Below, piece after piece: positions 22,501-62,600 of a DNA stretch of 64,000 nucleotides. Both the position numbers and the translations under genes were made by a program. The stretch is from positions 1 to 64,000 of the IMG/VR virus record IMGVR_UViG_3300027899_000001, one strand, 5' to 3'. The number at the start of each line of letters is the position of its first letter. Within the stretch, counting starts at the first letter, position 1. A model generated the notes under the pieces. It saw only the letters and a program-made list of their open reading frames with translations, had not been told where the DNA came from and did no database searches.

Positions 22501-25500
22501 TGCAATTACTAGTGCATCTTGTGGTGGTAATGTATCTCATGATGGAAGTACAGCAGTTACAGCTAAAGGTATTTGTTGGAATACTTTTTCAAATCCTACA
22601 ATATACGATTCTTCTACAACAAATGATGGAATAGGAGAAGGAATATTTTATAGCGCGCTAACTAACTTAAATCCAAGTACTCATTATTATGTTAGAGCTT
22701 ATGCAACAAATGAAATGGGAACAGCATATGGAAACGAAGTAACTCTTGATACAAGTAAAAATTCATATTATGTAAATATTGTTAATGGAAATGACTTAAA
22801 TAGTGGAACTACAGAAAATACTGCGTGGAAAACTATAACAAGAGTTAACACAGCATTAACAACTCTTCCTGCTGGTTATGCTATACGTTTTAGAAAAGGA
22901 GATACATGGTATGGAACAATAAATATTGGAAAATCCGGAGCTGCTAATTTTCCAATTACTATAGGTTCTTATGGAACTGGCGCTAATCCAGTAATAACTG
23001 GATTTACTACAGCATCCTCATGGACAAATGCAGGAAATGGTATATATTATACGTCTTTAACTGCGGAATCTTCAACGTTAATGGTATCATTAGATGGTTA
23101 TCAAGCACAAATGGGTAAATGGCCTGCAATAGGTTGGAATCATATAGAAAGTACAAATGGAACAAGTACAATAACTGACACAGCTATAACAAGTACTTAT
23201 AACTGGATAGGTGCACAAGTAGTTATAAGAAAAAATCGTTGGGTTATTGATAAATGTATAATAACTAATCAAAGTGGAAATACAATAACATACAATGATC
23301 CAGATGCGGGATCTTATCAAGCAGTAGCAGGATGGGGATATTTTATACAAGCAGATTTAAGTACATTAGTATCTTATGGAAATTGGTATCATGATCATAG
23401 TGCAAATAGATTTTATATGTATTTTGGCGCTGAACTTCCCGCAAATCATGTTGTAAAAATAAGTTCTTTAGATAGATGTATTTATAATAGTAATTATGAT
23501 CATATAACAATTGATGGTCTTACGCTTGAAGGTGCTAACATAGATGGCTACTATGGATATAATAGTGCATCAAATCATATTATTCAAAATTGTAATATTG
23601 GTTTTTCTGGTCGTCATGGAATATATTTACAATATCCATCAAATTGTATTGTACAAAATTGTAGTATTTATAGTTCAAATGATCATGCCGTTTATTCAAC
23701 TTCTCAAGTTGGTGTAAGTGGACCGTTTACTATTAGTAGAAATACTATCACAAATACTTTTATATTTCCTGGAACTACAGATAGCGGTGATAATCATGGA
23801 AATGCATTATATTCTTGTGCAGATAATACATTAATTCAAAATAATAGAATTCTTAATACAGGACATCTTCCAATTAATTGGGGAGGAACTAATTCAATAA
23901 TAAGAAATAATATTATAGATACATTTTGTTTTACAACTGATAATGGTGCGGGTATTTATACTTATGGTGATAGAAATACTGGAAAACAAGTTATTGGTAA
24001 TATAGTATTAAATGCTATTAGTGCTACAGACGGTACCGATATAAATGATCCTTTATATCCTAATACTCATTTTTCTCATGGCTTATATACTGATGGATTT
24101 AGTGCACATGTTTCATTTATAGGAAATACTGTTGGCAATGTAAATGCATTTGGTATTCGTATGAGTGCTAGTACTAATATTGTACTTAAAGATAATACAT
24201 TTTATCAATCTTATGGATTTGTTTCAGTTTTAAGATCTGATACTCTTATAAGAGATATAAGTGTGTATAATAATGTATTTATATCTAATAATTTAGATGA
24301 ACATTCTCCAGAAGGTATTAAATATGAATCTTATTTTACTCCTATTTCTAGTTCAACTGCAACATCTGAAATTCAAGGATGGGGCTATTGGAATAATAAT
24401 TATTATTATACAAATACTGAAACTGCAATGGTAGTATATGGTACAGATACTGGTCAATGTGCTCCAAAAAGTTTAGAAAAATGGAAAACAAAATATAATC
24501 ATGACACAACTTCTGTATTTTATCCTAAGTTTTCAAGCTATACAATAAATTCATCAGGAACGAACATGTTATCTAATTCTAGATTTGATTCAGATATTAA
24601 TAACTGGACAGGAACATCATTAGCTTCAATATCTTGGGTATCTAATTCTAGTCTTGATGGTGGTGCATTGAAACTTAGAACAAATAAAAAAGATTATAAT
24701 TGGAATTGGTGGGATTCTGATGATTATTTCTATTCATCAATTGGCGCAGTGGAAAGTAATAAAACATATATAATTAAGCTTTTAGGAAAATCTGAATTAG
24801 CAAATAAAACTATTTCTGTTCGTATGTATCAAACAAGTACGGGAAATTCTATTCAACAATTTTTTACTTTACCAAGCACAAGTGTCAATAAAGAGATATT
24901 ATTCAAATATCCTCAAACAGATCCTGCTGCTTCATTACGTTTTGCTGGTGGAGACGGTGATGCATCAGTATATTTTGATAATATTTATTGCTATGAAGCA
25001 AGTGTAAATCTTATAGACGTTGCTGCTACTAATTTTCATTTTATTTATAATACATCAGAAAATATAAATAAGACATATAGTTTAAGCGCTCCAATGAATG
25101 ACATAAAAGGTAATTATTATGCTGCTGGAATGTTAGATTTATCTACATGGAATTCATTAGTTCTTTTTGGAACAGGTACTGTTACTGAAGGAAGCACTGC
25201 AATTACATATGTTCCTACTGTTACTACATCTCCAGTTACAAATATATTTTTAACTAGTGCTTCTACTGGAGGTAATGTAACTAATGGTGGCGGATTAACT
25301 GTTACATCAAGAGGCGTATGTTGGAATACATCTATAAATCCAACTATATTAAATTCTTCAACAAATAATGGAACAGGAACCGGAGTATTTACAAGTGCAT
25401 TAAGTAACTTAAATCCAAGTACTCATTATTATGTTAGAGCTTATGCTGAAAATTCACAAGGTATAGGATATGGTTCTAATGTTCAATTTGATACGTCACC

Positions 25501-27163
25501 AAATATTTCACTTGCAACTGTTACAACTGGAACAATATCTAATATATTTACAACTAGCGCTTCTTCAGGAGGTACAGTTGTACATGATGGAAGTACATTA
25601 GTTACAGCTAGAGGAGTATGTTGGAATAATTTAATTAATCCTACAATATTAAATAGTAAATCTATAGATGGTACCGGAGAAGGTGTATTTACAAGTGCTT
25701 TAATTAATTTGAATGCAAGTACACATTATTATGTTAGGGCATATGCAACTAATGCGGTTGGAACTGCTTATGGTTCTAATGTTCAATTTGATACAAGTAC
25801 ATTAGATGTCTCCATTAGTATTTCGCTTCCTGTTGTTAGTACAATTGCAGTAACAAACATATTATTAACTAGTGCTTCTTGTAGATGTGATATAACATCA
25901 GATGGCAGTGCTAGTGTTACAGCTAGAGGTGCATGTTGGAATACATCAATAAACCCAACAGTTTCTAATTCTCACACAGTAGATGGATCTGGAACAGGAA
26001 TATACACAAGTTCTTTATTAGCATTAAATCCAAGCACACACTATTATGTTAGAGCTTATGCTACAAACGTAGCAGGAACAGCATATGGACTCAATGTTCA
26101 ATTTGATACTAATGCTATTTCCGTTCCTACTATATTTACAAATATTATAACAGATATTAGTTTATTTACAGCAACTGGAGGAGGAAATGTAACTCATGAT
26201 GGAAGTTCTGCTGTAATAACAAAAGGAATATGTTGGTCAATTTCTTCAAATCCTACAATCTTAAATCCGTCAACAAATGATGGAAGTGGTACAGGTTCTT
26301 ACATTAGTTATTTAACAGGATTAAATTCAAGCACTTATTATTATGTTAGAGGTTATGCTACAAATTCTGCAGGTGTTGGCTATGGACAAGTTGTAACATT
26401 TAGTACTTTATCAGCACCAGGAAATTCTTTATTTAGTGGGCTTATGGGATATTGGGCATTAGATGAAATTTCTGGACCTGTGTTAGATTCTTATGGAAGT
26501 ATAAATGGAACAAATTATGGAGCAACGCCAAATGTTCCTGGAAAACTTAATACTGGATATTATTTCGATGCATTAGAACATGATTATATTTCATTTGGAA
26601 ATGTATGTAAACCAACAGCAGGTTTAAGTTTTTCTATGTGGATAAAGGCTCCCGCTCAAAATGATATATTTGCCGGTGTAATAAATAATAATTATTGGTA
26701 TAGCGCCGGAAATCAGGCAGGCTATAATATTTTTATAGATAGTAGCAAATTATTGTTTGAATTATCTAATGGCGCATCAACTTCTTTATATAGTAATAAA
26801 CTAGTTGATGATAATGAATGGCATTTTGTAGCTGGAACTTGGGATGGTTCAATAATGAAAATTTATATTGATAGTTCTGTTGCTGATGCTAGTTTAAGTA
26901 GAACAACTCCATTGGCATATGATGTAACATCAACATTGCGTTTTGGATCTCATTCTGCACCATACGATTATACAGGTATTCTTGATGAAGTTGGAATATG
27001 GAATAGAGCATTAACTCCAACAGAAATAGGTACTTTATATAATGATGGAAATGGTTTAGGATATCCATTTGCAACTCAGGAAGTTAGTACATCATTACGT
27101 TTCTTAACAAATGATGGAAAATACTTAACCTCGAATGATAAAATGATATTCGCAAATACATAA
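10592..27163 (+). CDS. Giant 5523-aa mosaic protein: about 8 right-handed beta-helix modules (one PL9-like), 11 FN3-like repeats and 2 LamG domains
   Basis: Eleven PTVTT...GGNVT.DG...VT..GVCW...NPT...YYVRAYA.N..G..YG repeats; beta-helix NN ladders with GAYEY ends; two GIIDE(I/V)GIWNRALT-type LamG ends; hydrophobic N-terminus. Confidence 0.85.
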   Translation: MKSIKRLILTIILTFVLGVQLLMAILTVTGQTIINSDTTWNGYYVDRYEPMTFTFSNNSITSQNYSNYMLQAGDEDIQPTNNNLAGEVITGNRLTWNGTDMTSICHGVFTGCNINVVIKYNYLEKVPMGLIRKSASNMVNTSGGVAYNILNKTFIGTVVKGISNVNIYNNTYYSDRTFANTQYGRALIDVYTNTDLVPNSVAHNTKIKNNIFYTKYQINNIRVLDNESLIGFESDYNLFYCESGTPMFEISGTQITFAQWQALGYDTHSVVVNPNFIDFVNFVPTTRLNYGTNLGSTWQTGLSTSAVWIVGSTPTTSDQNGTWQVGARVYASSATAPTVTTTAVTSITSTTAISGGNVTSDGGSAVTARGVCWNTSTNPTIANSKTSNGTGTGSYSSSLTGLSNGVTYYVRAYATNSVGTAYGSNVSFVAENAVAGTYYVSTTGNDANSGTISQPFFTLNKAWTVIGPGDIVYVRGGTYQYLTSQECVGKNGTAGNLIKIWAYPGETPVITKAVGWTYTHRAGIYFVGSYFHWKGIEVSGFTQIDDNEYAGFNVDDGTNHNIFELLNIHHNGGSNRLINQDCDDNLVLNCDFHHNYDPLTTVPSAYGNADGMAANPRAGTTNTIRGCRFWSNCDDGLDLYGANGLVIVDKCWAWSNGYREDGVTKGGDGNGIKLGGTTGDYSTTHLRTVTNSLAFHNRNAGFTQNVARCISHIYNNTAYHNADGADVYNLGFEFEETSIVHILRNNVAHANQHPTNLQANYGNCITSNNTWNGLVTVTDADFTTISSTGVDGSRQSDGNLPALSFLHLITGSDLIAAGTNVGLITDGDGVAWNNPPSMGAYEYVSGSVVIPTVTTTAVTSITSTTAISGGNVTSDGGSAVTARGVCWNTSTNPTIANSKTSNGTGTGSYVSSLTGLSNGVTYYVRAYATNSVGTTYGSNVSFVAANSAPGTYYVKNGGNNNLDGLSDATAWETIDKVNSTITGGNTVLFKRGSTWRNQQIRPVAGSAGAYTTYGAYGTGAKPKILGSLTANSGWTNVSGNIWQTTGWTKDVGNIIFNNEQSCGRKFMTATPTLTTQGDFWYDYVNDRVRMYSVGNPASYYTNIEFALSQDAVVTSYNAPYIIIEDLDFRYWGNCVIQNARNYSIYRRLDISYIGGGDAGETQGAAWYDTRWGNGIQMWEGDGSYITVESCKIDQVYDAGISPQGQAGSWTMHDIFIRNNIVTNCEYNFEFWLRAGATAYNIYVEHNVFAYAGYGFAHNQRPDAIQGHNLQMGGMQATRNNIYLRNNIFYMSLNYNYSAWWYNPGPGTTPPGPSTYDDLYNITFDYNLYYTPGVYIGFFDALPTIFNTFAQWQAAFQVDESHGKGVDPLFVDPANGDFHLQPGSPAIAAGLAVAGVTTDFDGVSYASTPSMGALEYVSPTNNTYYVKNGGNDNLNGLSDSTAWETISKVNSFIKGGDKVLFKRDSVWRNEAISVVNGSAGAYTTYGAYGTGAKPRILGSVQLNSGWTNVSGNIWQNSNAAVLAKQVGNLIFNNEQSVGVKVASEALLNAQGRFYWNFSTGVLRMYSVGNPALYYSNIEAALQQQTADVYGHSYIKFENLDFRYSGEGTIFGDSNYIQVYDCNISYNGGAYTDVGGGTRIGGGIGTWDNASYWEILRCRISNEYDAGITMQGTGVTLIHDMIIRNNIIEKCEYNFEFWERPNTGQMYNIWFEHNTLAYAGYGWSHTQRPDSQQGHSIYMGGMSVQRHDIYIRNNIFYSSINDNIAFSYYNDGSYDDLINITFDYNLYYNPGVNTAFADAHDIIFLTFANWQAAVSVDESHGIGTNPLFVNAAGGDYHLSIGSPAIAAGLAVTGVTTDFDGVSYNSSPAMGAYEYVPGSSNIYYIDPTGADSAGRNGSNVAGQQWLTLAYAISRVTTGDTIHVNPGTYNISSQITVPIGISIEGDGITSILRSTYTSGPTLNLANSVLGSGNQYIANIKMDGVSTTAHTAVNVYRRSNVSIYNCTFVDFLQWGVRYRGQDAGEVEPTLWATGNSFHDNSVNNCSMYYYPGGDADVDKRNGNGQGLLEISEQQGMRVYNNTLIQTGRTTWHNGYCIKGIMGYNKDIKIYNNIMTKAAYTEAYGITWDFVLEFWESRGGIEVYGNTITGGSLDFSGSGTENDTTTQKGIYDYAVWIHDNSIMNTTLSAYSNTHGILIEQSATDVIIERNWIENVWAGIYFPLTPKSNPMYGTIFNNITVRYNVIKNVGTSGNNLQGFGIHGPYAVTNMTGNNIQYYNNTIIGRSGSNSWGIQIPVLGTLTNVYVRNNIVQGFSGAGSAGIYCYNYGTVNYAWVQYNNLYQCANSNAPLYGLSISNLTSESAYAGTVPPFVSTTDYHLTTSKDGIYITSGLTDKDGVTPSNPPDIGAYEYALVNGVYYIDPTGADSAGRNGSNVAGQQWLTLAYAISRVTTGDTIHVNPGTYTVTTQTSVPIGINIEGNGIGSSIIRSHYIAGDGNLNNACLVLSGGTNTDQHISGLTLDGDSLWGDNAIVVYNRSNVSIYNCQVVNFLTQGIRFDGSSPSLSVNNSLYGCTITNSGGIDTSDRRANIFIRNNTSLRIYNNTLNQTLRVSNTGLGIRLEDGVYGCKIYNNYLYGIQPGADWSFTMECWCADTVNGVGWGLEIYGNTITGLIDFGSGVSKGTGSYTYAVSFHDNVMGTDVAHAVTDYQHGLLFELNGSDIIIYNNEFKFLDRPIYFTSGQFSNIDIHSNIIRNVPASYSDGAGILFIGSGSPTSEQNVYIRNNTIIAHTGGVGPAQYGILFDARGTVNNFYIQNNIIQGFSSAPYESYGTTGSIGTLVVQKNVLYLNGNSNNIKLTLTPTSLTNDLGLKYDPVFVNAAAYNFHIQSTSPALRAGLYVGLVFDYDDQFWNNPPSIGAYEYMGALPSSIPSVTTSSITNILATTASGGGTVTHDGSLALSSRGICWNTSTNPTVLNSSTNNGVSEGVFTSSLVGLNPSTHYYVRAYAANSLGVGYGANVEFDTLKNTSIPIVTTTAITDISTFTATGGGNVTHDGSLAVTSKGVCWSVLPSPTIDNTFNTSGTGEGSYVSYLTGLNASTHYYVRAYAINAEGVGYGYDVSFNTLGSGISLVNGLMGYWKLNETTGSALDSVGSINGAVFGATQGVPGKISTAYRFNAATNSYIDLGISCKPTTAISFAVWLNPSTFNDIYSGVINNTTWVNPTEQYGYNVFLDSSKMLFELFNGDVQNSLWSNATITPNTWHFIVGTWDGAKMKLYINNVLDASQARTTTIGYDLASVLRFGSHSAPYDYTGVIDEIGIWNRALTISEVSTLYNSSNGLTYPFDASTNISIPTVTTSSVTNIFTTSASCGGNVTHDGSTAVTAKGVCWNTSINPTVLNSSTNNGTGTGVFTSAITGLNPSTHYYVRAYATNAVGTAYGSNVQFDTSTSPIVTSIPTVTTSSVTNIFTTSASCGGNVTHDGSTAVIAKGVCWSILSNPTISSALTNDGTGEGSFTSAITGLNPSTHYYVRAYATNAVGTGYGNQITFDSSIPVSVISTYYINAINGNDASAGTTQNTAWKTVAKVNAYTFIPGDTVLFRRGDTWNERLVVAQSGISGYPITYSNYGVGANPIFNAQNIRPNGIRIEGVSYIIIDGIDTINSTEEGIVVFDWNEIGSSNVTIKNLTSFNNVKAGIYMSIPYGTIMDCSTINNGLTTQHHGIYMGRSSILNNIYADNWLIERCHSYGNTGAGYQIYNSGSGTLRYSVTNNNGGTSGGWGAVIDTLAPNKNVNVYYNVLYNNDYWGLEVANLNSGDAVNIYNNVMYNNGQADYGAGLHVANNDNVTDGSIKIKNNLIFSNVYYDFQQSQSISKYTVSNNDYWKSFGNIIVWNSITYPQTQFASYQVASGDILSISKDPSVVNAAAYNFNLTSSSSCKNAGVNVGLTTDFIGTGIINFPDIGAYEFIELNISTPTVTTSLITNIAITSASCGGNVSHDGSTAVTAKGICWNTFSNPTIYDSSTTNDGIGEGIFYSALTNLNPSTHYYVRAYATNEMGTAYGNEVTLDTSKNSYYVNIVNGNDLNSGTTENTAWKTITRVNTALTTLPAGYAIRFRKGDTWYGTINIGKSGAANFPITIGSYGTGANPVITGFTTASSWTNAGNGIYYTSLTAESSTLMVSLDGYQAQMGKWPAIGWNHIESTNGTSTITDTAITSTYNWIGAQVVIRKNRWVIDKCIITNQSGNTITYNDPDAGSYQAVAGWGYFIQADLSTLVSYGNWYHDHSANRFYMYFGAELPANHVVKISSLDRCIYNSNYDHITIDGLTLEGANIDGYYGYNSASNHIIQNCNIGFSGRHGIYLQYPSNCIVQNCSIYSSNDHAVYSTSQVGVSGPFTISRNTITNTFIFPGTTDSGDNHGNALYSCADNTLIQNNRILNTGHLPINWGGTNSIIRNNIIDTFCFTTDNGAGIYTYGDRNTGKQVIGNIVLNAISATDGTDINDPLYPNTHFSHGLYTDGFSAHVSFIGNTVGNVNAFGIRMSASTNIVLKDNTFYQSYGFVSVLRSDTLIRDISVYNNVFISNNLDEHSPEGIKYESYFTPISSSTATSEIQGWGYWNNNYYYTNTETAMVVYGTDTGQCAPKSLEKWKTKYNHDTTSVFYPKFSSYTINSSGTNMLSNSRFDSDINNWTGTSLASISWVSNSSLDGGALKLRTNKKDYNWNWWDSDDYFYSSIGAVESNKTYIIKLLGKSELANKTISVRMYQTSTGNSIQQFFTLPSTSVNKEILFKYPQTDPAASLRFAGGDGDASVYFDNIYCYEASVNLIDVAATNFHFIYNTSENINKTYSLSAPMNDIKGNYYAAGMLDLSTWNSLVLFGTGTVTEGSTAITYVPTVTTSPVTNIFLTSASTGGNVTNGGGLTVTSRGVCWNTSINPTILNSSTNNGTGTGVFTSALSNLNPSTHYYVRAYAENSQGIGYGSNVQFDTSPNISLATVTTGTISNIFTTSASSGGTVVHDGSTLVTARGVCWNNLINPTILNSKSIDGTGEGVFTSALINLNASTHYYVRAYATNAVGTAYGSNVQFDTSTLDVSISISLPVVSTIAVTNILLTSASCRCDITSDGSASVTARGACWNTSINPTVSNSHTVDGSGTGIYTSSLLALNPSTHYYVRAYATNVAGTAYGLNVQFDTNAISVPTIFTNIITDISLFTATGGGNVTHDGSSAVITKGICWSISSNPTILNPSTNDGSGTGSYISYLTGLNSSTYYYVRGYATNSAGVGYGQVVTFSTLSAPGNSLFSGLMGYWALDEISGPVLDSYGSINGTNYGATPNVPGKLNTGYYFDALEHDYISFGNVCKPTAGLSFSMWIKAPAQNDIFAGVINNNYWYSAGNQAGYNIFIDSSKLLFELSNGASTSLYSNKLVDDNEWHFVAGTWDGSIMKIYIDSSVADASLSRTTPLAYDVTSTLRFGSHSAPYDYTGILDEVGIWNRALTPTEIGTLYNDGNGLGYPFATQEVSTSLRFLTNDGKYLTSNDKMIFANT
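11599..11769 (+). repeat. 171-bp exact direct repeat (second copy 13141-13311)
   Basis: FN3 copies 1 and 2 are nucleotide-identical over this span by manual alignment. Confidence 0.85.
16235..16367 (+). repeat. 133-bp exact direct repeat (second copy 17828-17960)
   Basis: Identical N-caps (IDPTGADSAGRNGSNVAGQQWLTLAYAISRVTTGDTIHVNPGTY) of two otherwise divergent beta-helix modules. Confidence 0.85.
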
Positions 27164-45464: not shown

Positions 45465-47117
45465 TTATTGCATTACATCTTCTCTTTTTCCCATTTTAAA
45501 TCCCGGAAATGCTTGTCTAAACATATCCATAGCTTTTTTGTACTTATCATGTTTACCATCTTTAATATCACCGGTTTGTTCGTGTATATAATCATGTGTT
45601 TCAACAATAAGGAATAAAGCTTTAGCTGCTAATGATGCATCTCCAAGATCAATGAAATATTGAACATAATTCTCAAGTTGTTGAGCAGTTAATGTCATAT
45701 CTCTTGAATTAGAACAAGCTGCTCCAATTAAAGCGTTTGCTTGTGCAATATCAAATCCTGTTCCTTTTTTCTTTGGTTTGGGTGCTTTCGCAGGATTGGT
45801 AAAGATTAATTTAATTTCTTCGGGTCTAAATGATTCAAGAAGAGTTAAAAATGCCATAAATGATTCAACTGTTTTTGAATGAATTGTTCCACCAATTAAA
45901 TCTTCCATATCAGCTCTGTTAAATACAATATCACCATATTCTTGACAAGCACCTAACATATCTGAAAGTGCTTCCCATGTACGAGGAGTTGTATTAACTT
46001 TAGTTTGGTTATCAAATAGATAGAAATGATCACGGTTAAAATCGATAAAGTCTGTGATTCTTGAATCAATTTTCTTTCCTTTTGCCCATGTAATCCATTC
46101 GTCTACGGTAGGAACAAAGTTAAAGTGTTGGAAACGGTTTGCAAGTGCAGAACCAATTTCTGTTTGGCCGCCTTCCGGGTCATCTAATGGACGGTTTGTT
46201 GCAGCAACTATAGCCCATTTGCTTCCTAATACTCTATCACCAATAACTCTTTCATTAACAAGTTTTAAGCAAGTATTTTGTACTTCTTCTTTAGCTCTTG
46301 AAAGTTCATCTAAGAATATAATTCCGCCATTACCCATATTAGCTACATCATTTCTTCTTGCATTTTCTTCAGGATCATCACTTGGTTCATAAACTGGAAG
46401 CCAGTTTTTAGGAATATCAATAGCCATTTTTGTTCCTGTATCTGTAACACTTACAATTGCGGGAAGTGCCCAGTCATCTGGCATCATCTTTGCAGTTTGA
46501 ACGTCTATAAGTCTATAGCCAGGTCCTAATGATTTAATAACTCCACCAGTGATAGCTGTTTTTCCAATTCCAGGAGCGCCCCAAAGAAGTGGAGGCATAA
46601 GTTTTGGATTTCTAACTTGCATGATAATTCTTTTAACAAGAAAATCCGAATGCACGTTTCTCATTTTATCTTCACCTGAATATTTTGTTCCAACAACTGC
46701 TTCAAAAAGTTTTGCTTCTCTTCTATAAGATGTACTTTCTCTTAGTTTAAGTCTTCCTCTTGTTTTATTTTTTGCAGCTTGTTCTAGATATTCTTTATGA
46801 ACTCTATCCATAATAGCCTGTCCACTTTTATATTTAGCTAAAGCGGGTTCTAATTTAATATCTTCATCATTTGGTATGTAATCAACAAAGCCATCTATTT
46901 TTCCTTGTGAATATAATATACCTATATTTACTGGAGCCATAGCGGGAATAGCTTTATCACCAAAAAATCCGATAAAGAATTTTCCGATTTTCTTAAAAAG
47001 CCCTCCAATAAGACCTTTAGCTTTACCAACCACATCTCCAAATTTACCTTCATTAAGGGATTGTCCTCCTTTTATTTGTAAGGTTTCTTCAATTGATTCA
47101 GGAACAAGTTTTTTCAT
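45465..47117 (-). CDS. MoxR-like AAA+ ATPase
   Basis: Walker A GAPGIGKT, Walker B IIFLDE, sensor AATN, ANRF arginine finger and TPRTWE. Confidence 0.85.
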   Translation of the reverse strand: MKKLVPESIEETLQIKGGQSLNEGKFGDVVGKAKGLIGGLFKKIGKFFIGFFGDKAIPAMAPVNIGILYSQGKIDGFVDYIPNDEDIKLEPALAKYKSGQAIMDRVHKEYLEQAAKNKTRGRLKLRESTSYRREAKLFEAVVGTKYSGEDKMRNVHSDFLVKRIIMQVRNPKLMPPLLWGAPGIGKTAITGGVIKSLGPGYRLIDVQTAKMMPDDWALPAIVSVTDTGTKMAIDIPKNWLPVYEPSDDPEENARRNDVANMGNGGIIFLDELSRAKEEVQNTCLKLVNERVIGDRVLGSKWAIVAATNRPLDDPEGGQTEIGSALANRFQHFNFVPTVDEWITWAKGKKIDSRITDFIDFNRDHFYLFDNQTKVNTTPRTWEALSDMLGACQEYGDIVFNRADMEDLIGGTIHSKTVESFMAFLTLLESFRPEEIKLIFTNPAKAPKPKKKGTGFDIAQANALIGAACSNSRDMTLTAQQLENYVQYFIDLGDASLAAKALFLIVETHDYIHEQTGDIKDGKHDKYKKAMDMFRQAFPGFKMGKREDVMQ

Positions 47118-47163
47118 AATGTTATTTTTATTATTTTTATTTTATATATTCTTTATTTATTTA

Positions 47164-49200
47164 TTAAATATCACTAACAGATGTATGTATTACCTTTCCG
47201 AATGGTGCTTCCCACTGGAAGTTATCGTATATAACCCAAATGAATTTTCTAAAATATTTAGGAACTCTTGGATTTGATGCATAACCATCAGTTAAGAAAA
47301 TACAAAGATTAATAGCATCATTGAAATTATCTCTAATCCAATCAAGTGGTTTCTGGAAGTCTGTGCCTCCACCACCTTTGATATTCTTTGGTCTCCACAC
47401 TTTAGCACCATGAGGTTTAACTGTTTGAACAGAACCTGGATCTACTCCATCATCAAAGAATATAACTGTAACTTCTTTAATTTTCTTTGCAAATATGATA
47501 TCATTCACTTCACCAATAAGTTTATCAAATGTATTTCCATGAAACATTGATCCTGAAACGTCTACAGCTACAACAACTTTCTTTATTGCATCTACTTTAG
47601 GTTTCATACCACGTTTTAGATATTCATCGCTTTTATATAAGTGTTTTTTAGCACCAATTCTAAATTGTTTTTCTGGTGATAATGCACTTCCTACGAATAG
47701 TTTTAATTGTGCTCTCCAGTCTACAGTTCCTTTAAGGAGTTTTCCTAATTTATTAATAAGAGCATCGCCTCTACCACTTCCAGCTTGTTTTAGTTTTTCA
47801 GCAGTTTTTTGAATTTCTCTTGCATTTGATTCCCATTTAGCTCTTCCAGATTCGCCAGCTTTCATTTCTTCATCATCATATCCAGAAGCTCTTGCTATTT
47901 GTTCTCCTAATTTAGGATCAATAAATCCCCCCGCTCTACCGCGATCTGCATTTTGCATTCTTCTTGAAAGACCAGCTTGTTCTTCAGTTAATCCAGATTT
48001 TTTATCTGCTATTTGCATTTCGCCCGTTTGACTAGCAATTGCTTTAGCAGTTTCTTTAGATCCACCGGGTTTACTTTCTTTTCCTTCACCTTTGTCTCCG
48101 CCTTCGCCTTCTCCTGAACCGCTACCTTTACCTGGTTTTGATTCACCCGGTTTTGGTTCTCCTTTTTTACCCTTACCTTGGCCTTCACCTTCACCGCCTT
48201 CTTCACCTTCTTCTCCTGGCTCTTGTTCATATTCACCTTGAATATCTATGCCGCCACCACCGCCACCGCCACCTTGTGATTTAGGTGGAGGAGGAAGAAT
48301 AGGTATAAGATCTTCTGCTTTATAGCTTTCATTAATAAATGGGTGCATTATATAAGCTTCATTAATAGGATCAACTTCAAATGTTCCATCAGGATTAATA
48401 CTTTTAATAATACCCTTTCCACCTGTAGCTTTAATTCTAACTTTAGTTCCTGGAGTTAATTCAATTTCACCTTTTTGTGGTGGTTGAGGAGGTCCTGGAG
48501 GTCCTGGAGGTGGAGCGGTTTTAGGTAATTTAGTAGGATCAATCTTAATTGGAGGAGGCGGTGGAGGCAATGGAGGCATATTTTTAATTATGTCATGATA
48601 AATTTGCTCCACAGGAAGATTAAGATATTTTTTATCATATAATCCTTTAATTTCATCTTTAACAAATTTTTCGTCAAAGTCATCAGTTGTATCAACAATG
48701 ATTGTATTAATTTCAAAATCTCCTGCAATATTAAATACTTCTTGATTAAATCCCGCTCCTCTTTCCATATGCATTAAAATACAATGGTAAATTTCATGAA
48801 TAAGAACAAATATCTTAGCCATCCAAGAAAGACTATCTGCGAATTCTGGATTAACAAATAATCTAACTCCATCAGTTGCCATTGTCTGAACTGCCCAAGT
48901 ATAGATAATTGGATCAAATTCATGAATAAAGGGACGATAAAGAGGAGATTGAGTTACGATTTTATATTTAGCAGCTTCCATATCCTTTTTAACTTTCTTT
49001 ACATTTATAGTTTTTCCAGTATAAGGTGAAACACATTCTTCCATATCCTCAATTCTTGGAATTTTAGCAGCTTGATCTGCTAACATCGCTCCAGTCATTT
49101 TTGGTTGTGTTGCTTCATTAATCTTTCCAGAAGGATTTAACTTTTTTAGAAAGTCCTCTAACAATGGATAAAAATTGTAATTTATTTCTTCTTTTTTCAT
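47164..49200 (-). CDS. DUF2201-like metallopeptidase plus VWA domain protein (MoxR partner)
   Basis: TMATDG, HEIYH (HExxH), Pro/Gly-rich linker, MIDAS DVSGS, GGGTDF and LTDG. Confidence 0.85.
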   Translation of the reverse strand: MKKEEINYNFYPLLEDFLKKLNPSGKINEATQPKMTGAMLADQAAKIPRIEDMEECVSPYTGKTINVKKVKKDMEAAKYKIVTQSPLYRPFIHEFDPIIYTWAVQTMATDGVRLFVNPEFADSLSWMAKIFVLIHEIYHCILMHMERGAGFNQEVFNIAGDFEINTIIVDTTDDFDEKFVKDEIKGLYDKKYLNLPVEQIYHDIIKNMPPLPPPPPPIKIDPTKLPKTAPPPGPPGPPQPPQKGEIELTPGTKVRIKATGGKGIIKSINPDGTFEVDPINEAYIMHPFINESYKAEDLIPILPPPPKSQGGGGGGGGIDIQGEYEQEPGEEGEEGGEGEGQGKGKKGEPKPGESKPGKGSGSGEGEGGDKGEGKESKPGGSKETAKAIASQTGEMQIADKKSGLTEEQAGLSRRMQNADRGRAGGFIDPKLGEQIARASGYDDEEMKAGESGRAKWESNAREIQKTAEKLKQAGSGRGDALINKLGKLLKGTVDWRAQLKLFVGSALSPEKQFRIGAKKHLYKSDEYLKRGMKPKVDAIKKVVVAVDVSGSMFHGNTFDKLIGEVNDIIFAKKIKEVTVIFFDDGVDPGSVQTVKPHGAKVWRPKNIKGGGGTDFQKPLDWIRDNFNDAINLCIFLTDGYASNPRVPKYFRKFIWVIYDNFQWEAPFGKVIHTSVSDI

Positions 49201-59547: not shown

Positions 59548-59832
59548 TTATGGTTTATAAAAAATGTTTTCTATATATTGAAAAATAAAAACAACGGAAA
59601 GGCCTATGCACAATAGGCCCCAAATGTTCCAATCCGTTTTAAATATAAGTTTTAATGTGTATCCAAAAATAAAAGATTTAAATGGTATAATAAATAATAG
59701 GATAAATGAAGTAAAAAGATCTGCTAATGTATTAGTAAACTGTGTTTTAGTAGACTCAGTTTCTATAGATTTTTCACCTTTATTTTTAAATTCATTTAAT
59801 TTATTACTTAATGAATTATTACTCAGCGTCAT
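59548..59832 (-). CDS. Small membrane protein
   Basis: Two hydrophobic segments in the C-terminal half. Confidence 0.6.
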   Translation of the reverse strand: MTLSNNSLSNKLNEFKNKGEKSIETESTKTQFTNTLADLFTSFILLFIIPFKSFIFGYTLKLIFKTDWNIWGLLCIGLSVVFIFQYIENIFYKP

Positions 59833-60464
59833 TATTTTTTTGTTTTAAGATCTAATTTTTTTACTTTTGTATCGCCAGGAGCAGCTTTCTTTTCTTCTTT
59901 TTCTTCTTTTTCTTCAGATTCACCTGCTTCGTGTTCTTCTTTAGCTTCTTTTTCTTTAGATTCACCAGCTTCATGTTTTTCATGAGCTTTATCTTCTGGA
60001 GCTTTTCCTTTATCTTTTATATCACCGGGTTTGCCATCAGTTTTCGCTGCAGGACCTTTTTCACCTTCTCCTTTTGAAAAATTGGGAGATTCTTTCTTAG
60101 GATCGAGATTTCCTTTTTTCTCTGGTTCTTTTTCACCAGGAGCTCCATCTTCTTTTTCTCCAGGTTTTCCGCCAGCAGTTTTAACTTCACCAAACATTCC
60201 GGGTTTAAAGTCTTTAACTGAGTCAAGATCTGTTTGAAGATCGTATCCAGGTTCAAATTTAGAACCGCCCATATTCATTTCTACTTTAACTTCGACTTTT
60301 CCCTTTTGAAATTCTTTTTTAAGCCAATCATAAGATTTCTTATTTGTATCTGGAATAACTATTCCATCAGCATCAGTTAAGCCTTCGCCACCACTCATCA
60401 TTTGAGTAGATTCTTCGTAAAGTTTTTCTAAATAGTCGTTGATGTTAAAATTACCTGCTTTCAT
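59832..60464 (-). CDS. Highly charged E/K-rich protein, possibly prohead core/internal
   Basis: LEKLYEE N-terminal motif, low-complexity EK tail and its own promoter motif. Confidence 0.6.
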   Translation of the reverse strand: MKAGNFNINDYLEKLYEESTQMMSGGEGLTDADGIVIPDTNKKSYDWLKKEFQKGKVEVKVEMNMGGSKFEPGYDLQTDLDSVKDFKPGMFGEVKTAGGKPGEKEDGAPGEKEPEKKGNLDPKKESPNFSKGEGEKGPAAKTDGKPGDIKDKGKAPEDKAHEKHEAGESKEKEAKEEHEAGESEEKEEKEEKKAAPGDTKVKKLDLKTKK

Positions 60465-62234: not shown

Positions 62235-62284
62235 AGAATGAATTACTTTTATTTATATATTCTTTATGTCTAAATTGAATTGAC

Positions 62285-62310
62285 AAAAAACCCCCACTGA
62301 GGCTGGGGGT
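62285..62310 (-). terminator. Terminator of the tmRNA transcript
   Basis: Minus strand ACCCCCA-GCCTCAG-TGGGGGT followed by TTTTT. Confidence 0.85.
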
Positions 62311-62434
62311 AAATCTCCTACCAACGAGTGCTTCTTAAGCAGCCATTTGTAATGCGTAACTATTTTCGCCGTTTACTTGCGTGTTGAGACATTCATTATT
62401 TCCCTTAGTATACAATCTAAACCAAATCATCCCC
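62311..62434 (-). ncRNA. ssrA: tmRNA coding piece (5' acceptor strand, P2 strand and tag ORF GENSYALQMAA*) of a permuted ssrA
   Basis: Starts GGGGATG-ATTTGGTTTAGA-TTGTATAC; tag ORF 62370-62335 follows GCAAGTAAAC; stop codon lies in hairpin TGCTT-AAG-AAGCA. Confidence 0.88.
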
Positions 62435-62466
62435 ATTAAAAGCAATATCTCTTTTATAAAGATTTG

Positions 62467-62545
62467 TGGAGATGGTGGGATCCGACCCCACGTCTTGCAT
62501 ACCTACTCTATAACTAGCTCTTGCGAGCATTCTCAATATCTTAAA
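62467..62545 (-). ncRNA. ssrA: tmRNA acceptor piece (P2 strand, GAC, T arm, 3' acceptor strand), upstream of the coding piece; 5' boundary approximate
   Basis: GTATGCAA-GAC-GTGGG-GTCGGAT-CCCAC-CATCTCC-A; forms a 7-bp acceptor stem with G3:U70 and an 8-bp P2 with the coding piece. Confidence 0.88.
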
Positions 62546-62548
62546 GAA

Positions 62549-62556
62549 CAAATATA
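62549..62556 (-). promoter_or_regulatory. Bacteroidota-type -7 promoter box TAnnTTTG (TATATTTG)
   Basis: Exact match to the consensus immediately upstream of the tmRNA acceptor piece; the -33 box is not clear. Confidence 0.55.
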
Positions 62557-62600
62557 ATACAAAATCTTACAATTTGTATCATATCTTTGTTAATTATTTG

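What the first reader, a model, noticed from the sequence alone, without database searches (positions are those of the whole stretch)
62311..62545. The tmRNA is extremely reduced and has a non-canonical T-loop
Seen: the two pieces total about 200 nt. Only ~37 nt separate P2 from the resume codon, with no obvious PK1, and PK2-4 appear replaced by a GCTC-GCAA-GAGC GNRA hairpin. A second inter-piece helix TCTCAA/TTGAGA is possible. The T-loop is GTCGGAT rather than TTCRANY. Known: standard tmRNAs are about 350 nt, and alphaproteobacterial two-piece tmRNAs also have a G-starting T-loop. Inference: a natural minimal trans-translation RNA, with convergent T-loop change linked to permutation.
Basis: partly seen in the sequence, partly recalled or inferred. 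Interest (0 to 1): 0.6.

Follow-up and report, generated by a model that had tools for sequence, protein, structure and literature searches.

The report
Reduced two-piece tmRNA of a megaphage
A 405-kb bacteriophage carries a real, conserved, unusually small ribosome-rescue RNA (tmRNA), made in two pieces and lacking the usual first pseudoknot; it appears to have been rearranged from the tmRNA type of its likely Bacteroidota hosts, separately from the known bacterial two-piece tmRNAs.

Summary
The feature is real. It lies on the minus strand (about 62547-62285) of a complete 405,016-bp jumbo phage. ARAGORN and Rfam RF04321 both call a circularly permuted tmRNA with tag GENSYALQMAA. A portal-anchored search found 40 distinct homologues in related phage contigs, always downstream of the portal gene. 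Covariation supports these elements:
- the acceptor and T stems
- P2a and P2b
- the tetraloop hairpin
- a long P5 with the stop codon in its loop

PK1 is absent throughout the family: only 12-18 nt separate the last helix from the resume codon. The mature size is about 84 + 149 nt, not about 200.

The T-loop GUCGGAU is confirmed. However, 34 of 40 relatives keep U54/A58, so the change is not tied to permutation. Four relatives have GGCRGAW together with a D-loop G-to-A change, the same solution found in alphaproteobacteria.

The tRNA-like domain, P2a and resume/tag region resemble Bacteroidota standard tmRNAs (tag GENNYALAA), not alphaproteobacterial two-piece forms. This suggests an independent permutation. 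The phage has no SmpB. Expression and processing are untested.

The parts
62554..62582 (-). Promoter-like site: -35 ATGATA, 17-nt spacer, -10 TATTAT. It predicts a transcript start near 62547.
   Evidence: consensus scan only. The motif TATTATATT...GTTCTTTAA recurs in relatives and upstream of the standard tmRNA of LR756500.1.
62466..62547 (-). Acceptor piece, about 84 nt after CCA completion. It comprises a 5' tail, the H2 strand, the hairpin, the P2b and P2a 3' strands, the T arm, the acceptor 3' strand, A73 and the first C only.
   Evidence: CCA is not encoded (the genome reads ACAA), as in 0 of 39 tRNA genes of this phage.
62531..62536 (-). H2, acceptor-piece strand UUGAGA. It pairs with 62389-62384.
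   Evidence: Cognate versus non-cognate duplex test, p <= 0.0005; 39 of 40 relatives form 6-10 bp. Also in the cofold MFE structure.
62517..62528 (-). Hairpin GCUC-GCAA-GAGC, branching between H2 and P2b.
   Evidence: RNAalifold: 4 pairs, each with 2-6 double-sided changes. 28 distinct stems; loops are GNRA, UNCG-like or other.
62510..62514 (-). P2b 3' strand GUUAU. It pairs with AUAAU at 62399-62395.
   Evidence: UA, CG and GC types at each pair. Cognate test p = 0.0045.
62495..62502 (-). P2a 3' strand GUAUGCAA. It pairs with UUGUAUAC at 62415-62408.
   Evidence: (p <= 0.0005).
62475..62491 (-). T arm: stem GUGGG/CCCAC and the non-canonical 7-nt loop GUCGGAU (62486-62480; G54, U55, C56, G57, G58, A59, U60).
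   Evidence: T-stem pairs covary strongly.
62467..62474 (-). Acceptor-stem 3' strand CAUCUCC plus discriminator A. U70 of the G3:U70 alanine identity pair is at 62470.
   Evidence: The G:U pair is invariant in 40 of 40.
62435..62465 (-). Intervening sequence, 31 nt, predicted to be removed.
   Evidence: Its length ranges from 15 to 166 nt and it is not conserved among 40 relatives. Processing is inferred, not shown.
62286..62434 (-). Coding piece, about 149 nt, starting at G1 = 62434 (GGGGAUG pairs with the acceptor 3' strand). The D-loop GG is at 62423-62422.
62384..62389 (-). H2, coding-piece strand UCUCAA, in the position where PK1 normally sits.
62371..62383 (-). Single-stranded 13-nt spacer CACGCAAGUAAAC ahead of the resume codon. 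It is too short for PK1.
   Evidence: mode 14 nt, range 12-18 in 39 of 40. No covarying partner.
62335..62370 (-). Tag reading frame GGC...GCU GCU UAA, encoding GENSYALQMAA plus stop.
   Evidence: The frame is kept in all 40 relatives. Two Bacteroidota tmRNAs encode GENNYALAA.
62320..62350 (-). P5: a long irregular hairpin holding the 3' half of the tag frame, with the stop codon UAA (62337-62335) in the loop.
   Evidence: pair c97:c103 is UA 14, GC 13, CG 8, AU 2.
62285..62319 (-). 3'-terminal pseudoknot plus terminator. AGG (62319-62317) pairs with CCU (62302-62300) in the loop of hairpin 62310-62290, followed by the T-run 62290-62285.
   Evidence: In L048 and L014 a separate terminator follows the hairpin, and in L025 a tRNA follows it, so it is not merely a terminator.

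Best explanation
This is a functional, phage-encoded, circularly permuted (two-piece) tmRNA gene.

Proposed pathway:
- One transcript runs from about 62547 to the terminator at about 62285.
- Host tRNA-processing enzymes are predicted to cut it: RNase P at G62434, and a 3' endonuclease or exonuclease after C62466.
- The host CCA-adding enzyme then completes the acceptor end.
- The products are an acceptor piece of about 84 nt and a coding piece of about 149 nt.

The two pieces are held together by four intermolecular helices: the acceptor stem, P2a, P2b and H2. The alanine-accepting tRNA-like domain keeps G3:U70 and A73. It is expected to be charged by host AlaRS and to enter stalled ribosomes with host SmpB and EF-Tu. 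Translation then resumes at GGC and adds GENSYALQMAA, close to the Bacteroidota tag GENNYALAA.

Instead of PK1, helix H2 and a branching hairpin sit 13 nt upstream of the resume codon. Instead of PK2-4 there is a single small 3'-terminal pseudoknot.

Shown here: the gene, its conservation, the secondary structure by covariation, and the lack of SmpB in the phage.
Inferred: processing, charging, tagging, and the benefit to the phage (keeping ribosomes free while host and phage mRNAs are degraded or cleaved during infection).
For: - Detection: ARAGORN; RF04321 at 64.5 bits against a gathering score of 47.
- Phage context: a 405,016-bp record with direct terminal repeats, terminase, sheath and T4-like portal genes, and 39 tRNAs.
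- Conservation: 40 distinct permuted tmRNAs downstream of the portal gene in related contigs with 60-93% portal identity.
- Structure: RNAalifold predicts 36 pairs, 26 with double-sided changes. The top mutual-information pairs are all helix pairs. Cognate duplex tests give H2 p <= 0.0005, P2a p <= 0.0005 and P2b p = 0.0045. The pseudoknot pair is GC in 29 and CG in 8, with at least two independent switches. The cofold MFE structure of the two pieces reproduces the model.
- Identity elements: G3:U70 in 40 of 40; the tag frame ends in AA (VA in one) plus a stop codon in all.
- Processing context: the intervening sequence varies from 15 to 166 nt. In L025 the gene sits inside a tRNA operon between tRNA-His and tRNA-Arg.
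- Dependence on the host: no SmpB, no CCA-adding enzyme, and no tRNA gene encodes CCA.
- Host clues: the nearest GenBank portals are from Prevotella Lak megaphages. Shine-Dalgarno-like motifs occur upstream of only 3% of long ORFs. The tag matches Bacteroidota GENNYALAA.
Against: - There is no expression, processing or aminoacylation evidence. No RNA run holds the sequence.
- The window's own T-loop carries G54 and G58 instead of the U54:A58 pair that 34 of 40 relatives keep. Its effect on folding, modification, or SmpB and EF-Tu binding is unknown.
- PK1 is absent, and it matters for E. coli tmRNA function (established knowledge).
- The RF04321 score (49-65 bits for the family) is far below that of sampled alphaproteobacterial members (113-162 bits). 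None of the lineage-specific models reaches its threshold (beta 44.1 against 84).
- The host is inferred, not shown.
Confidence: 0.8

Rival explanations
1. The RNA is a competitor or modifier of host trans-translation rather than a helper. It occupies host SmpB, or replaces the host tag with a variant (...QMAA instead of ...LAA) that the host proteases or adaptors read differently. Rescued proteins would then be spared, or degraded on the phage's terms.
For: - The phage has no SmpB and must share the host's.
- Phage-lineage tags mostly end in MAA, while the sampled GENNY-type Bacteroidota tags end in LAA.
- A CDS-less mycobacteriophage tmRNA inhibits host tmRNA in E. coli (reported in PMC11915505).
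Against: - The full tag frame, P5 and the stop codon are conserved in all 40, which an SmpB sponge would not need.
- Tags ending in AMAA also occur in cellular genomes of the same phylum, so MAA is not phage-specific.
- This rival differs from the best explanation only in the downstream effect, not in the molecular mechanism.
Confidence: 0.12
2. The window's copy is a decaying or inactive gene. The non-canonical T-loop and the loss of pseudoknots reflect relaxed selection.
For: - The window's T-loop has G54 and G58, a state seen in only 5 of 40 relatives.
- PK1 is missing.
- Expression is untested.
Against: - G54 and G58 change together in all five cases, with no half-changed loops.
- All helices and the tag frame are intact in the window, and the cofold reproduces the comparative model.
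- Compensatory changes run through the family.
- Loss of PK1 is shared by the whole conserved family, so it is an ancestral design, not decay.
Confidence: 0.05
3. Rival on origin: the gene was captured from one of the known two-piece lineages (Alphaproteobacteria, some Betaproteobacteria, Cyanobacteria), as in marine pelagiphages and cyanophages. Its tag later converged on that of a new host.
For: - Phage two-piece tmRNAs of alphaproteobacterial and cyanobacterial type are known (PMC9004378).
- The best lineage-specific Rfam match is beta_tmRNA.
- Four family members carry the alphaproteobacterial-type GGCRGAW T-loop and AG D-loop.
Against: - The beta model scores 44.1 against a threshold of 84, and the alpha and cyano models score lower still.
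- Identity of the tRNA-like domain/P2a 5' segment, the resume/tag region and the P2a 3' strand/T arm/acceptor end is highest to Bacteroidota standard tmRNAs (0.64/0.50/0.67) and lowest to 18 alphaproteobacterial permuted tmRNAs (0.48/0.39/0.55).
- Shared motifs UUUGAC-AGC, CUGUUUGGAC and UAAAC-GGCGAAAAUA-UACGC occur in Bacteroidota and the phage family but in 0 of 18 alphaproteobacterial sequences.
- PK1, kept in the known two-piece forms (PMC3985003), is absent.
- The alphaproteobacterial-type T-loops are found in 4 of 40 members whose nearest relatives have canonical loops.
- No beta or cyano sequences were compared directly.
Confidence: 0.15

Closest known systems
Alphaproteobacterial two-piece tmRNA (Rfam RF01849; Caulobacter crescentus, 213 + 83 nt)
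   Same: - Permuted gene order: acceptor piece, intervening sequence, coding piece.
- The break lies downstream of the tag frame.
- A hairpin lies in the 5' part of the acceptor piece (Caulobacter helix 11, a remnant of pk4, PMC1168896).
- There is a 3'-terminal pseudoknot on the coding piece.
- Some phage-family members share the GGCRG-type T-loop with an AG D-loop.
   Different: - The phage RNA is about 233 nt against 296 nt.
- It has no PK1.
- An extra intermolecular helix (H2) lies 5' of the hairpin, making a three-way junction.
- Most family members keep the canonical T-loop.
- Tags are GEN.Y...MAA rather than ANDN...
- RF04321 scores are 49-65 against 113-162 bits.
- Sequence is closest to Bacteroidota tmRNAs, not alphaproteobacterial ones.
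Standard one-piece tmRNA of Bacteroidota (RF00023; 347-405 nt, tag GENNYALAA in several)
   Same: - D-loop/P2a motif UUUGACAGC.
- P2a 3' strand CUGUUUGGAC.
- Resume context UAAAC-GGC GAA AAU and a near-identical tag.
- No CCA encoded.

   Different: - The Bacteroidota form is one piece with the full pseudoknot set, scoring 117-186 bits on RF00023.
- The phage gene is permuted, about 40% shorter, and lacks PK1.
- None of 30 sampled genomes of the phylum had a permuted form.
Two-piece tmRNAs of marine phages (OM43 phage Melnitz, pelagimyophages, cyanophages; PMC9004378)
   Same: Phage-borne, permuted, carrying a complete tag frame, and found in lytic myophages.
   Different: - Those group with the alphaproteobacterial or cyanobacterial lineages, and some carry a glutamine riboswitch.
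- This family is from freshwater, sediment and sludge megaphages related to Lak phages.
- It is Bacteroidota-like in sequence and has no riboswitch or other Rfam match.
- It has no blastn match in 50,697 GenBank phage records.
Standard tmRNAs of related megaphages (Prevotella phage Lak-A2; LR756500.1; contig L087)
   Same: - The gene is linked to the portal gene in Lak-A2 and L087.
- In L087 it sits in the same syntenic slot.
- Tags end in MAA in Lak-A2 and LR756500.1 (DDEIDFRMAA, GNNAEMRMAA); the L087 tag ends in VAA.
- No CCA is encoded.

   Different: - These are one-piece RNAs of 357-411 nt matching RF00023 (58-95 bits).
- On the portal tree L087 is nested among lineages bearing the permuted form, so genes in this slot are exchanged.

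Membership tests
tmRNA (any form) | tRNA-Ala-like acceptor stem of 7 bp with G3:U70 and discriminator A73 | tested here: met
   GGGGAUG pairs with CAUCUCC, followed by A. The G:U pair is invariant in 40 of 40 relatives.
tmRNA (any form) | T arm with a 5-bp stem and a canonical 7-nt T-loop (U54 U55 C56 R57 A58 N N) | tested here: not met
   The stem is met, with covariation. The loop is GUCGGAU (G54, G58). 34 of 40 relatives keep U54/A58. The same kind of departure is normal in alphaproteobacterial tmRNAs, so this does not exclude membership.
tmRNA (any form) | Encoded or added 3' CCA | not testable with these tools
   Only the first C is encoded (ACAA). 0 of 39 phage tRNA genes encode CCA, and the phage has no CCA-adding enzyme. 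Addition by the host is inferred.
tmRNA (any form) | Tag reading frame with a resume codon, a C-terminal hydrophobic ...AA, and the stop codon in the helix 5 loop | tested here: met
   GENSYALQMAA plus UAA lies in the P5 loop. The frame is kept in all 40.
tmRNA (any form) | Pseudoknot PK1 between helix 2 and the resume codon | tested here: not met
   The spacer after H2 is 12-18 nt in 39 of 40 and has no covarying partner.
tmRNA (any form) | Acts with SmpB | not testable with these tools
   PF01668 does not match the complete phage genome. Use of host SmpB is inferred.
Permuted tmRNA (Rfam RF04321) | Score at or above the gathering threshold, and gene order acceptor piece, intervening sequence, coding piece | tested here: met
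   64.5 bits against 47. Eight relatives score 48.9-64.7.
alpha_tmRNA / beta_tmRNA / cyano_tmRNA (RF01849-RF01851) | Score at or above the gathering threshold of the lineage-specific model (which includes PK1 and the lineage's own helices) | tested here: not met
   The best is beta_tmRNA at 44.1 bits against 84. The others scored lower and were dropped by clan competition. None was listed at gathering level for the window or for 12 related loci.
Alphaproteobacterial two-piece tmRNA | Signature T-loop GGCRGUA in all members | tested here: not met
   17 of 18 sampled alphaproteobacterial genes have GGCRG(U/A)A. Only 4 of 40 phage-family genes have GGCRGAW, and the window has GUCGGAU.

The most novel reading that the evidence does not exclude
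This family may be a further, independent origin of circularly permuted two-piece tmRNA. It would be the first to arise in a virus lineage and the first derived from a Bacteroidota-type tmRNA.

In the course of the rearrangement:
- PK1 was replaced by an intermolecular helix plus a hairpin.
- PK2-4 were reduced to one minimal pseudoknot.
- Some members then converged on the alphaproteobacterial solution for the tRNA elbow (T-loop GGCRGNA paired with a D-loop G-to-A change).

It would be the smallest natural design so far that keeps a full tag frame, usable to define the minimal requirements of trans-translation.
Probability: 0.5. Interest if true: 0.7.

Novelty: new variant of a known kind. 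Interest (0 to 1): 0.6.

Why it matters
Two-piece tmRNAs are the textbook case of a circularly permuted RNA gene. They are said to have arisen three times in bacteria, and once more in mitochondria by descent.

A separate origin in megaphages, from the tmRNA type of the host phylum, would show that the rearrangement recurs readily. It would also show that a virus can remodel a core translation RNA.

The family gives a natural experiment with 40 variants:
- Trans-translation machinery apparently tolerates complete loss of PK1, with a trans helix 12-18 nt upstream of the resume codon in its place.
- It tolerates reduction of the pseudoknot ring to one pseudoknot of about 3 bp.
- It tolerates T-loops of three kinds.

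The paired change of T-loop position 55 (U to G) and the D-loop (G to A), seen independently here and in Alphaproteobacteria, is a testable tertiary contact.

The finding also bears on what huge phages do to host translation. This phage supplies 39 tRNAs and a tmRNA but relies on host SmpB.

Tried and rejected
Searches and tests that gave nothing useful:
- Exact-pattern scans of viral contigs for the T arm found only the same phage again. A resume-region pattern found few contigs.
- blastn of the gene against 50,697 GenBank phage records found no match.
- A search for RNA evidence found only three DNA runs, from freshwater and sediment, and no RNA.
- GTDB species genomes gave no portal relative. 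The nine hits of the resume-region pattern were all chance matches with no tmRNA. The family was not found in cellular genomes at that sensitivity, which says nothing about more divergent copies.
- Rfam on the long intervening sequences of relatives gave nothing.
- Literature: Keiler 2000 and Sharkady & Williams 2004 are not held. The strings GGCRGUA and GENNYALAA are in no held paper. The alphaproteobacterial signature and the Bacteroidota tag were therefore read directly from genomes.

Ideas considered and set aside:
- The portal tree was meant to order the standard and permuted forms, but it could not. The careful search did not finish, Lak-A2 and LR756500.1 sit on very long branches, and tmRNA subtypes do not follow the portal tree.
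- The leader motif GTTCTTTAA shared with the standard tmRNA of LR756500.1 was considered as evidence for rearrangement in place. It was rejected because the motif occurs about 35 times in the genome, including in the tRNA region.
- A possible 3-4 bp mini-hairpin sequestering the resume codon (CGC with GCG) was considered. There is too little variation to test it.
- The conserved AGGAG was considered as a Shine-Dalgarno site. It was rejected because it covaries with the hairpin loop and the phage does not use Shine-Dalgarno motifs.

Tools not used:
- The count of structure pairs, because it needs a typed structure string several hundred characters long. The counts were made in scripts instead.
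- Protein folding and complex tools, which are not relevant to an RNA.
Full report
**What is there**

The window is the first 64 kb of a complete 405,016-bp virus record with direct terminal repeats. It encodes a T4-type terminase, a tail sheath and a T4-like portal. The whole genome has 39 tRNA genes.

On the minus strand ARAGORN calls one permuted tmRNA at 62244-62556 with tag GENSYALQMAA. Rfam RF04321 (tmRNA_permuted) matches 62335-62516 at 64.5 bits against a gathering score of 47. No standard tmRNA and no SmpB are found in the genome.

A promoter-like site ends at 62554 and an intrinsic terminator lies at 62310-62285. These bound a transcript of about 263 nt.

**Anatomy in the window**

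I number the acceptor piece a(n) = 62561 - n and the coding piece c(n) = 62435 - n.

The acceptor piece runs from about 62547 to 62466 and contains, in order:
- a 5' tail
- UUGAGA (H2 strand)
- the hairpin GCUC-GCAA-GAGC
- GUUAU (P2b)
- GUAUGCAA (P2a)
- the T arm GUGGG-GUCGGAU-CCCAC
- the acceptor strand CAUCUCC, then A and C

Only the first C of CCA is encoded. The same holds for all 39 tRNA genes of the phage, and the phage has no CCA-adding enzyme.

A 31-nt intervening sequence follows.

The coding piece starts at G62434 and contains, in order:
- GGGGAUG, with G3 opposite U70
- the D-loop GG
- UUGUAUAC (P2a)
- AUAAU (P2b)
- UCUCAA (H2)
- a 13-nt spacer
- the tag frame at 62370-62335
- a long P5 with the stop codon in its loop
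- AGGAGA
- the terminal hairpin and U-run

An energy-only cofold of the two pieces reproduces the acceptor stem, T stem, P2a, H2, the hairpin, P5 and the 3' hairpin.

**Relatives**

Exact-pattern scans found only the same phage. I therefore anchored on the adjacent portal gene.
- Thirteen viral contigs and 80 metagenome contigs encode portals 60-100% identical to the window's.
- ARAGORN and nhmmer recover 40 distinct permuted tmRNAs.
- All lie downstream of the portal on the same strand.
- The source environments named in the records and run labels include freshwater, sediment and activated sludge.
- Intervening sequences range from 15 to 166 nt.
- In L025 the gene sits inside a tRNA operon, directly after tRNA-His and directly before tRNA-Arg, with no terminator. 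This fits maturation by tRNA-processing enzymes.

**Covariation**

- RNAalifold on 14 genes with short intervening sequences predicts 36 pairs, 26 of them with double-sided changes. These cover the hairpin, P2b, P2a, the T stem, the acceptor stem and P5.
- On the 40-sequence alignment the highest mutual-information pairs are helix pairs.
- MAFFT shifts H2, so I tested it by pairing each acceptor piece with every coding piece. Cognate duplexes average -7.29 kcal/mol and non-cognate ones -4.19, permutation p <= 0.0005. 39 of 40 form 6-10 bp.
- The same test gives p <= 0.0005 for P2a and p = 0.0045 for P2b.
- The hairpin has 28 distinct stems. Its loop is GNRA in about half of the family and otherwise UNCG-like or irregular. 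A specific tetraloop contact is therefore unlikely to be essential.

Just 5' of the terminal hairpin, AGG (c116-118) can pair with CCU (c133-135) in the hairpin loop.
- Pair c117:c134 is G:C in 29, C:G in 8 and G:U in 2 of 40.
- Pair c118:c133 is G:C in 39 of 40.
- The C:G state occurs in L022, whose nearest relatives are all G:C. It also occurs in a separate group, within which L072's nearest relative L053 is G:C. That makes at least two independent double changes.
- In L048 and L014 a separate terminator follows this hairpin, and in L025 a tRNA follows it. The element therefore belongs to the mature RNA.
- The pseudoknot helix is short (2-3 Watson-Crick pairs), so it remains the least secure part of the model.

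**PK1**

Within those 37 nt, P2b and H2 pair with the acceptor piece. After H2 only 12-18 nt remain in 39 of 40 genes, and these bases have no covarying partner.

PK1 is thus absent from the whole family. Known two-piece tmRNAs keep PK1 and PK2 (PMC3985003). In a survey of tmRNAs only Oenococcus oeni and one plastid lacked the PK1 fold (PMC1168896).

By position, H2 and the hairpin take the place of PK1. The flanks of P2b resemble helix 2d of standard tmRNAs (CUA-G...UAGA). The hairpin stands where pk4 stands, like helix 11 of Caulobacter (PMC1168896). This correspondence is my inference from reading the sequences.

**Size**

The mature RNA is about 84 + 149 = 233 nt. For comparison:
- Caulobacter: 213 + 83 nt (PMC1168896)
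- 30 sampled genomes of the Bacteroidota phylum: 347-405 nt
- related megaphage standard tmRNAs: 357-411 nt

**T-loop**

GUCGGAU is confirmed. Across the family:
- Positions 54 and 58 are U/A in 34, G/G in 5 and C/A in 1.
- The two positions change together in all five G/G cases.
- Four of the five G/G genes also have G55 (GGCGGAU, GGCGGAA twice, GGCAGAA).
- Exactly those four have AG instead of GG in the D-loop: 4 of 4 against 0 of 36.

I then read 18 alphaproteobacterial two-piece tmRNAs directly. Seventeen have GGCRG(U/A)A, and all have AG at the same D-loop position, three bases before CGAC. PMC1168896 also notes G at these T-loop positions in Caulobacter and a mitochondrion.

The phage family has therefore reached the alphaproteobacterial elbow design at least twice (L038, and the L014/L032/L025 group). 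The window shows a third state: G54/G58 with U55 and a GG D-loop.

Since 34 of 40 permuted genes keep U54/A58, the change is not a consequence of permutation.

**Where the gene came from**

None of the lineage-specific Rfam models reaches its threshold; beta scores 44.1 against 84. The family scores 49-65 bits on RF04321, while sampled alphaproteobacterial genes score 113-162.

The tag is close to GENNYALAA, which I found in a Flavobacterium and a Bacteroidales genome and in four more genomes of the phylum.

I compared three segments: the 5' tRNA-like domain plus P2a; the resume context plus the first codons; and the P2a 3' strand plus T arm plus acceptor end. Mean identity to the phage family was:

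| Group | Segment 1 | Segment 2 | Segment 3 |
|---|---|---|---|
| Two Bacteroidota tmRNAs (best pairs 0.80-0.89) | 0.64 | 0.50 | 0.67 |
| Five other standard tmRNAs | 0.57 | 0.42 | 0.58 |
| Three megaphage standard tmRNAs | 0.58 | 0.45 | 0.64 |
| 18 alphaproteobacterial permuted tmRNAs | 0.48 | 0.39 | 0.55 |
| Within the phage family | 0.70 | 0.58 | 0.73 |

Other points:
- The motif UUUGA(C/U) replaces UUCGAC in 36 of 40 phage genes and in the Bacteroidota sequences, but in none of the other standard or alphaproteobacterial ones.
- UUGACAGC with UGUUUGGAC is shared by phage subtypes and five Bacteroidota genomes.
- All 30 sampled genomes of the phylum have one-piece genes.
- The tmRNA database counts 24,380 standard and 48 permuted genes among 29,415 Bacteroidota genomes (PMC11915505, Supplementary Table 2).

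Taken together, this points to a permutation of a Bacteroidota-type tmRNA that is separate from the alphaproteobacterial lineage.

Limits of this inference:
- The segments are short.
- Only two, then 30, Bacteroidota genomes were sampled.
- Beta and cyano two-piece genes were not compared directly.
- The permutation could have happened in an unsampled cellular lineage rather than in the phage.

**Context in related phages**

- The nearest GenBank portals (38-40% identity) belong to LR756500.1 and the Prevotella Lak megaphages.
- Both carry standard tmRNAs, with tags GNNAEMRMAA and DDEIDFRMAA. In Lak-A2 the tmRNA lies next to the portal gene.
- Contig L087 (portal 63% identical) has a standard 357-nt tmRNA in the same syntenic slot as the permuted genes.
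- On a quick portal tree L087 is nested among lineages bearing the permuted form. Sister phages (L014/L090, L015/L037) carry different tmRNA subtypes.
- The slot therefore exchanges tmRNA genes by recombination, and synteny alone cannot show rearrangement in place.

**Host**

The host is inferred to be Bacteroidota from three clues:
- the Lak relationship
- the tag
- the near absence of Shine-Dalgarno-like motifs upstream of genes (3% against a 9% background) with A-rich leaders

**What is known already**

- Huge phages are known to carry tmRNAs (PMC7162821).
- Two-piece tmRNAs are known in marine phages, of alphaproteobacterial or cyanobacterial type (PMC9004378).
- RF04321 was built from alpha, beta and cyano sequences (PMC11915505).
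- I found no description of this PK1-less, Bacteroidota-like family.
- The gene has no blastn match among 50,697 GenBank phage records.
- The family was not found in 185,579 species genomes, by portal search or by one resume-region pattern.

**Verdict**

This is a real and conserved gene.

It is best filed as a new structural variant of two-piece tmRNA, phage-borne and probably of independent origin. Function, processing and host remain to be shown experimentally.

Noticed in passing
L087:4395-4751 (metagenome contig Ga0164313_10011795): A related phage (portal 63% identical) carries a standard one-piece 357-nt tmRNA (RF00023, 85.8 bits; 22-residue tag DEKSTFTFEDAMAFVEGTAVAA). It sits in the same slot between the portal gene and the homologue of window ORF 59832-60464. 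tmRNA genes of different architecture therefore replace each other at this locus.
   Followed up: partly
L012:7144-7275, L090, L035, L037, L060, L023 (intervening sequences of 120-136 nt); L009 and L013 (a different insert): In some relatives the intervening sequence between the two tmRNA pieces is a conserved insert of about 130 nt, with four hairpins that show compensatory changes. L009 and L013 share another motif (CCAAUAGUGCCC...GGCCA.GGAU). Neither matches any Rfam family. They may be passenger small RNAs or processing elements.
   Followed up: partly
L025:1245-1643: In one relative the permuted tmRNA is embedded in a tRNA operon. tRNA-His ends 13 nt before the H2 strand, and tRNA-Arg starts 5 nt after the 3' pseudoknot hairpin, with no terminator.
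   Followed up: yes
Genome G000:C1:353926-353999 (outside the window); tRNA cluster at 313-361 kb: The phage has 39 tRNA genes, including one with anticodon CUA (an amber suppressor, which ARAGORN labels Pyl). This recalls the TAG recoding described for Lak megaphages. Table 11 ORFs in the window look intact, so any recoding would be partial or limited to late genes.
   Followed up: no
window 10592-27163 (+): A single open reading frame of 5,523 codons, uninterrupted under table 11.
   Followed up: no
window 6388-9054 (+): An 888-aa protein combining FkbM-type methyltransferase, radical SAM and SPASM domains (Pfam).
   Followed up: no
window 45465-49200 (-): An adjacent AAA (MoxR-like) ATPase and a DUF2201 metallopeptidase/VWA protein.
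   Followed up: no
window 62540-62559 (-); genome 382125 and 282597 (-); L108 upstream of the LR756500.1 tmRNA: The motif TATTATATT...GTTCTTT(A/G)A precedes both the permuted tmRNA here and the standard tmRNA of LR756500.1. GTTCTTTRA occurs about 35 times in the genome, several times in the tRNA region. It may be a promoter or leader element for stable-RNA genes of these phages. Other relatives instead have the inverted repeat CCTATAATTAAAATAGG upstream, which is also present in the window at 59603-59617.
   Followed up: partly
L011, L015, L013 (T arms): Three family members have a 6-nt T-loop (UUCGAU or UUCGAC) between intact 5-bp stems. This is a one-base deletion relative to the canonical 7-nt loop.
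   Followed up: no
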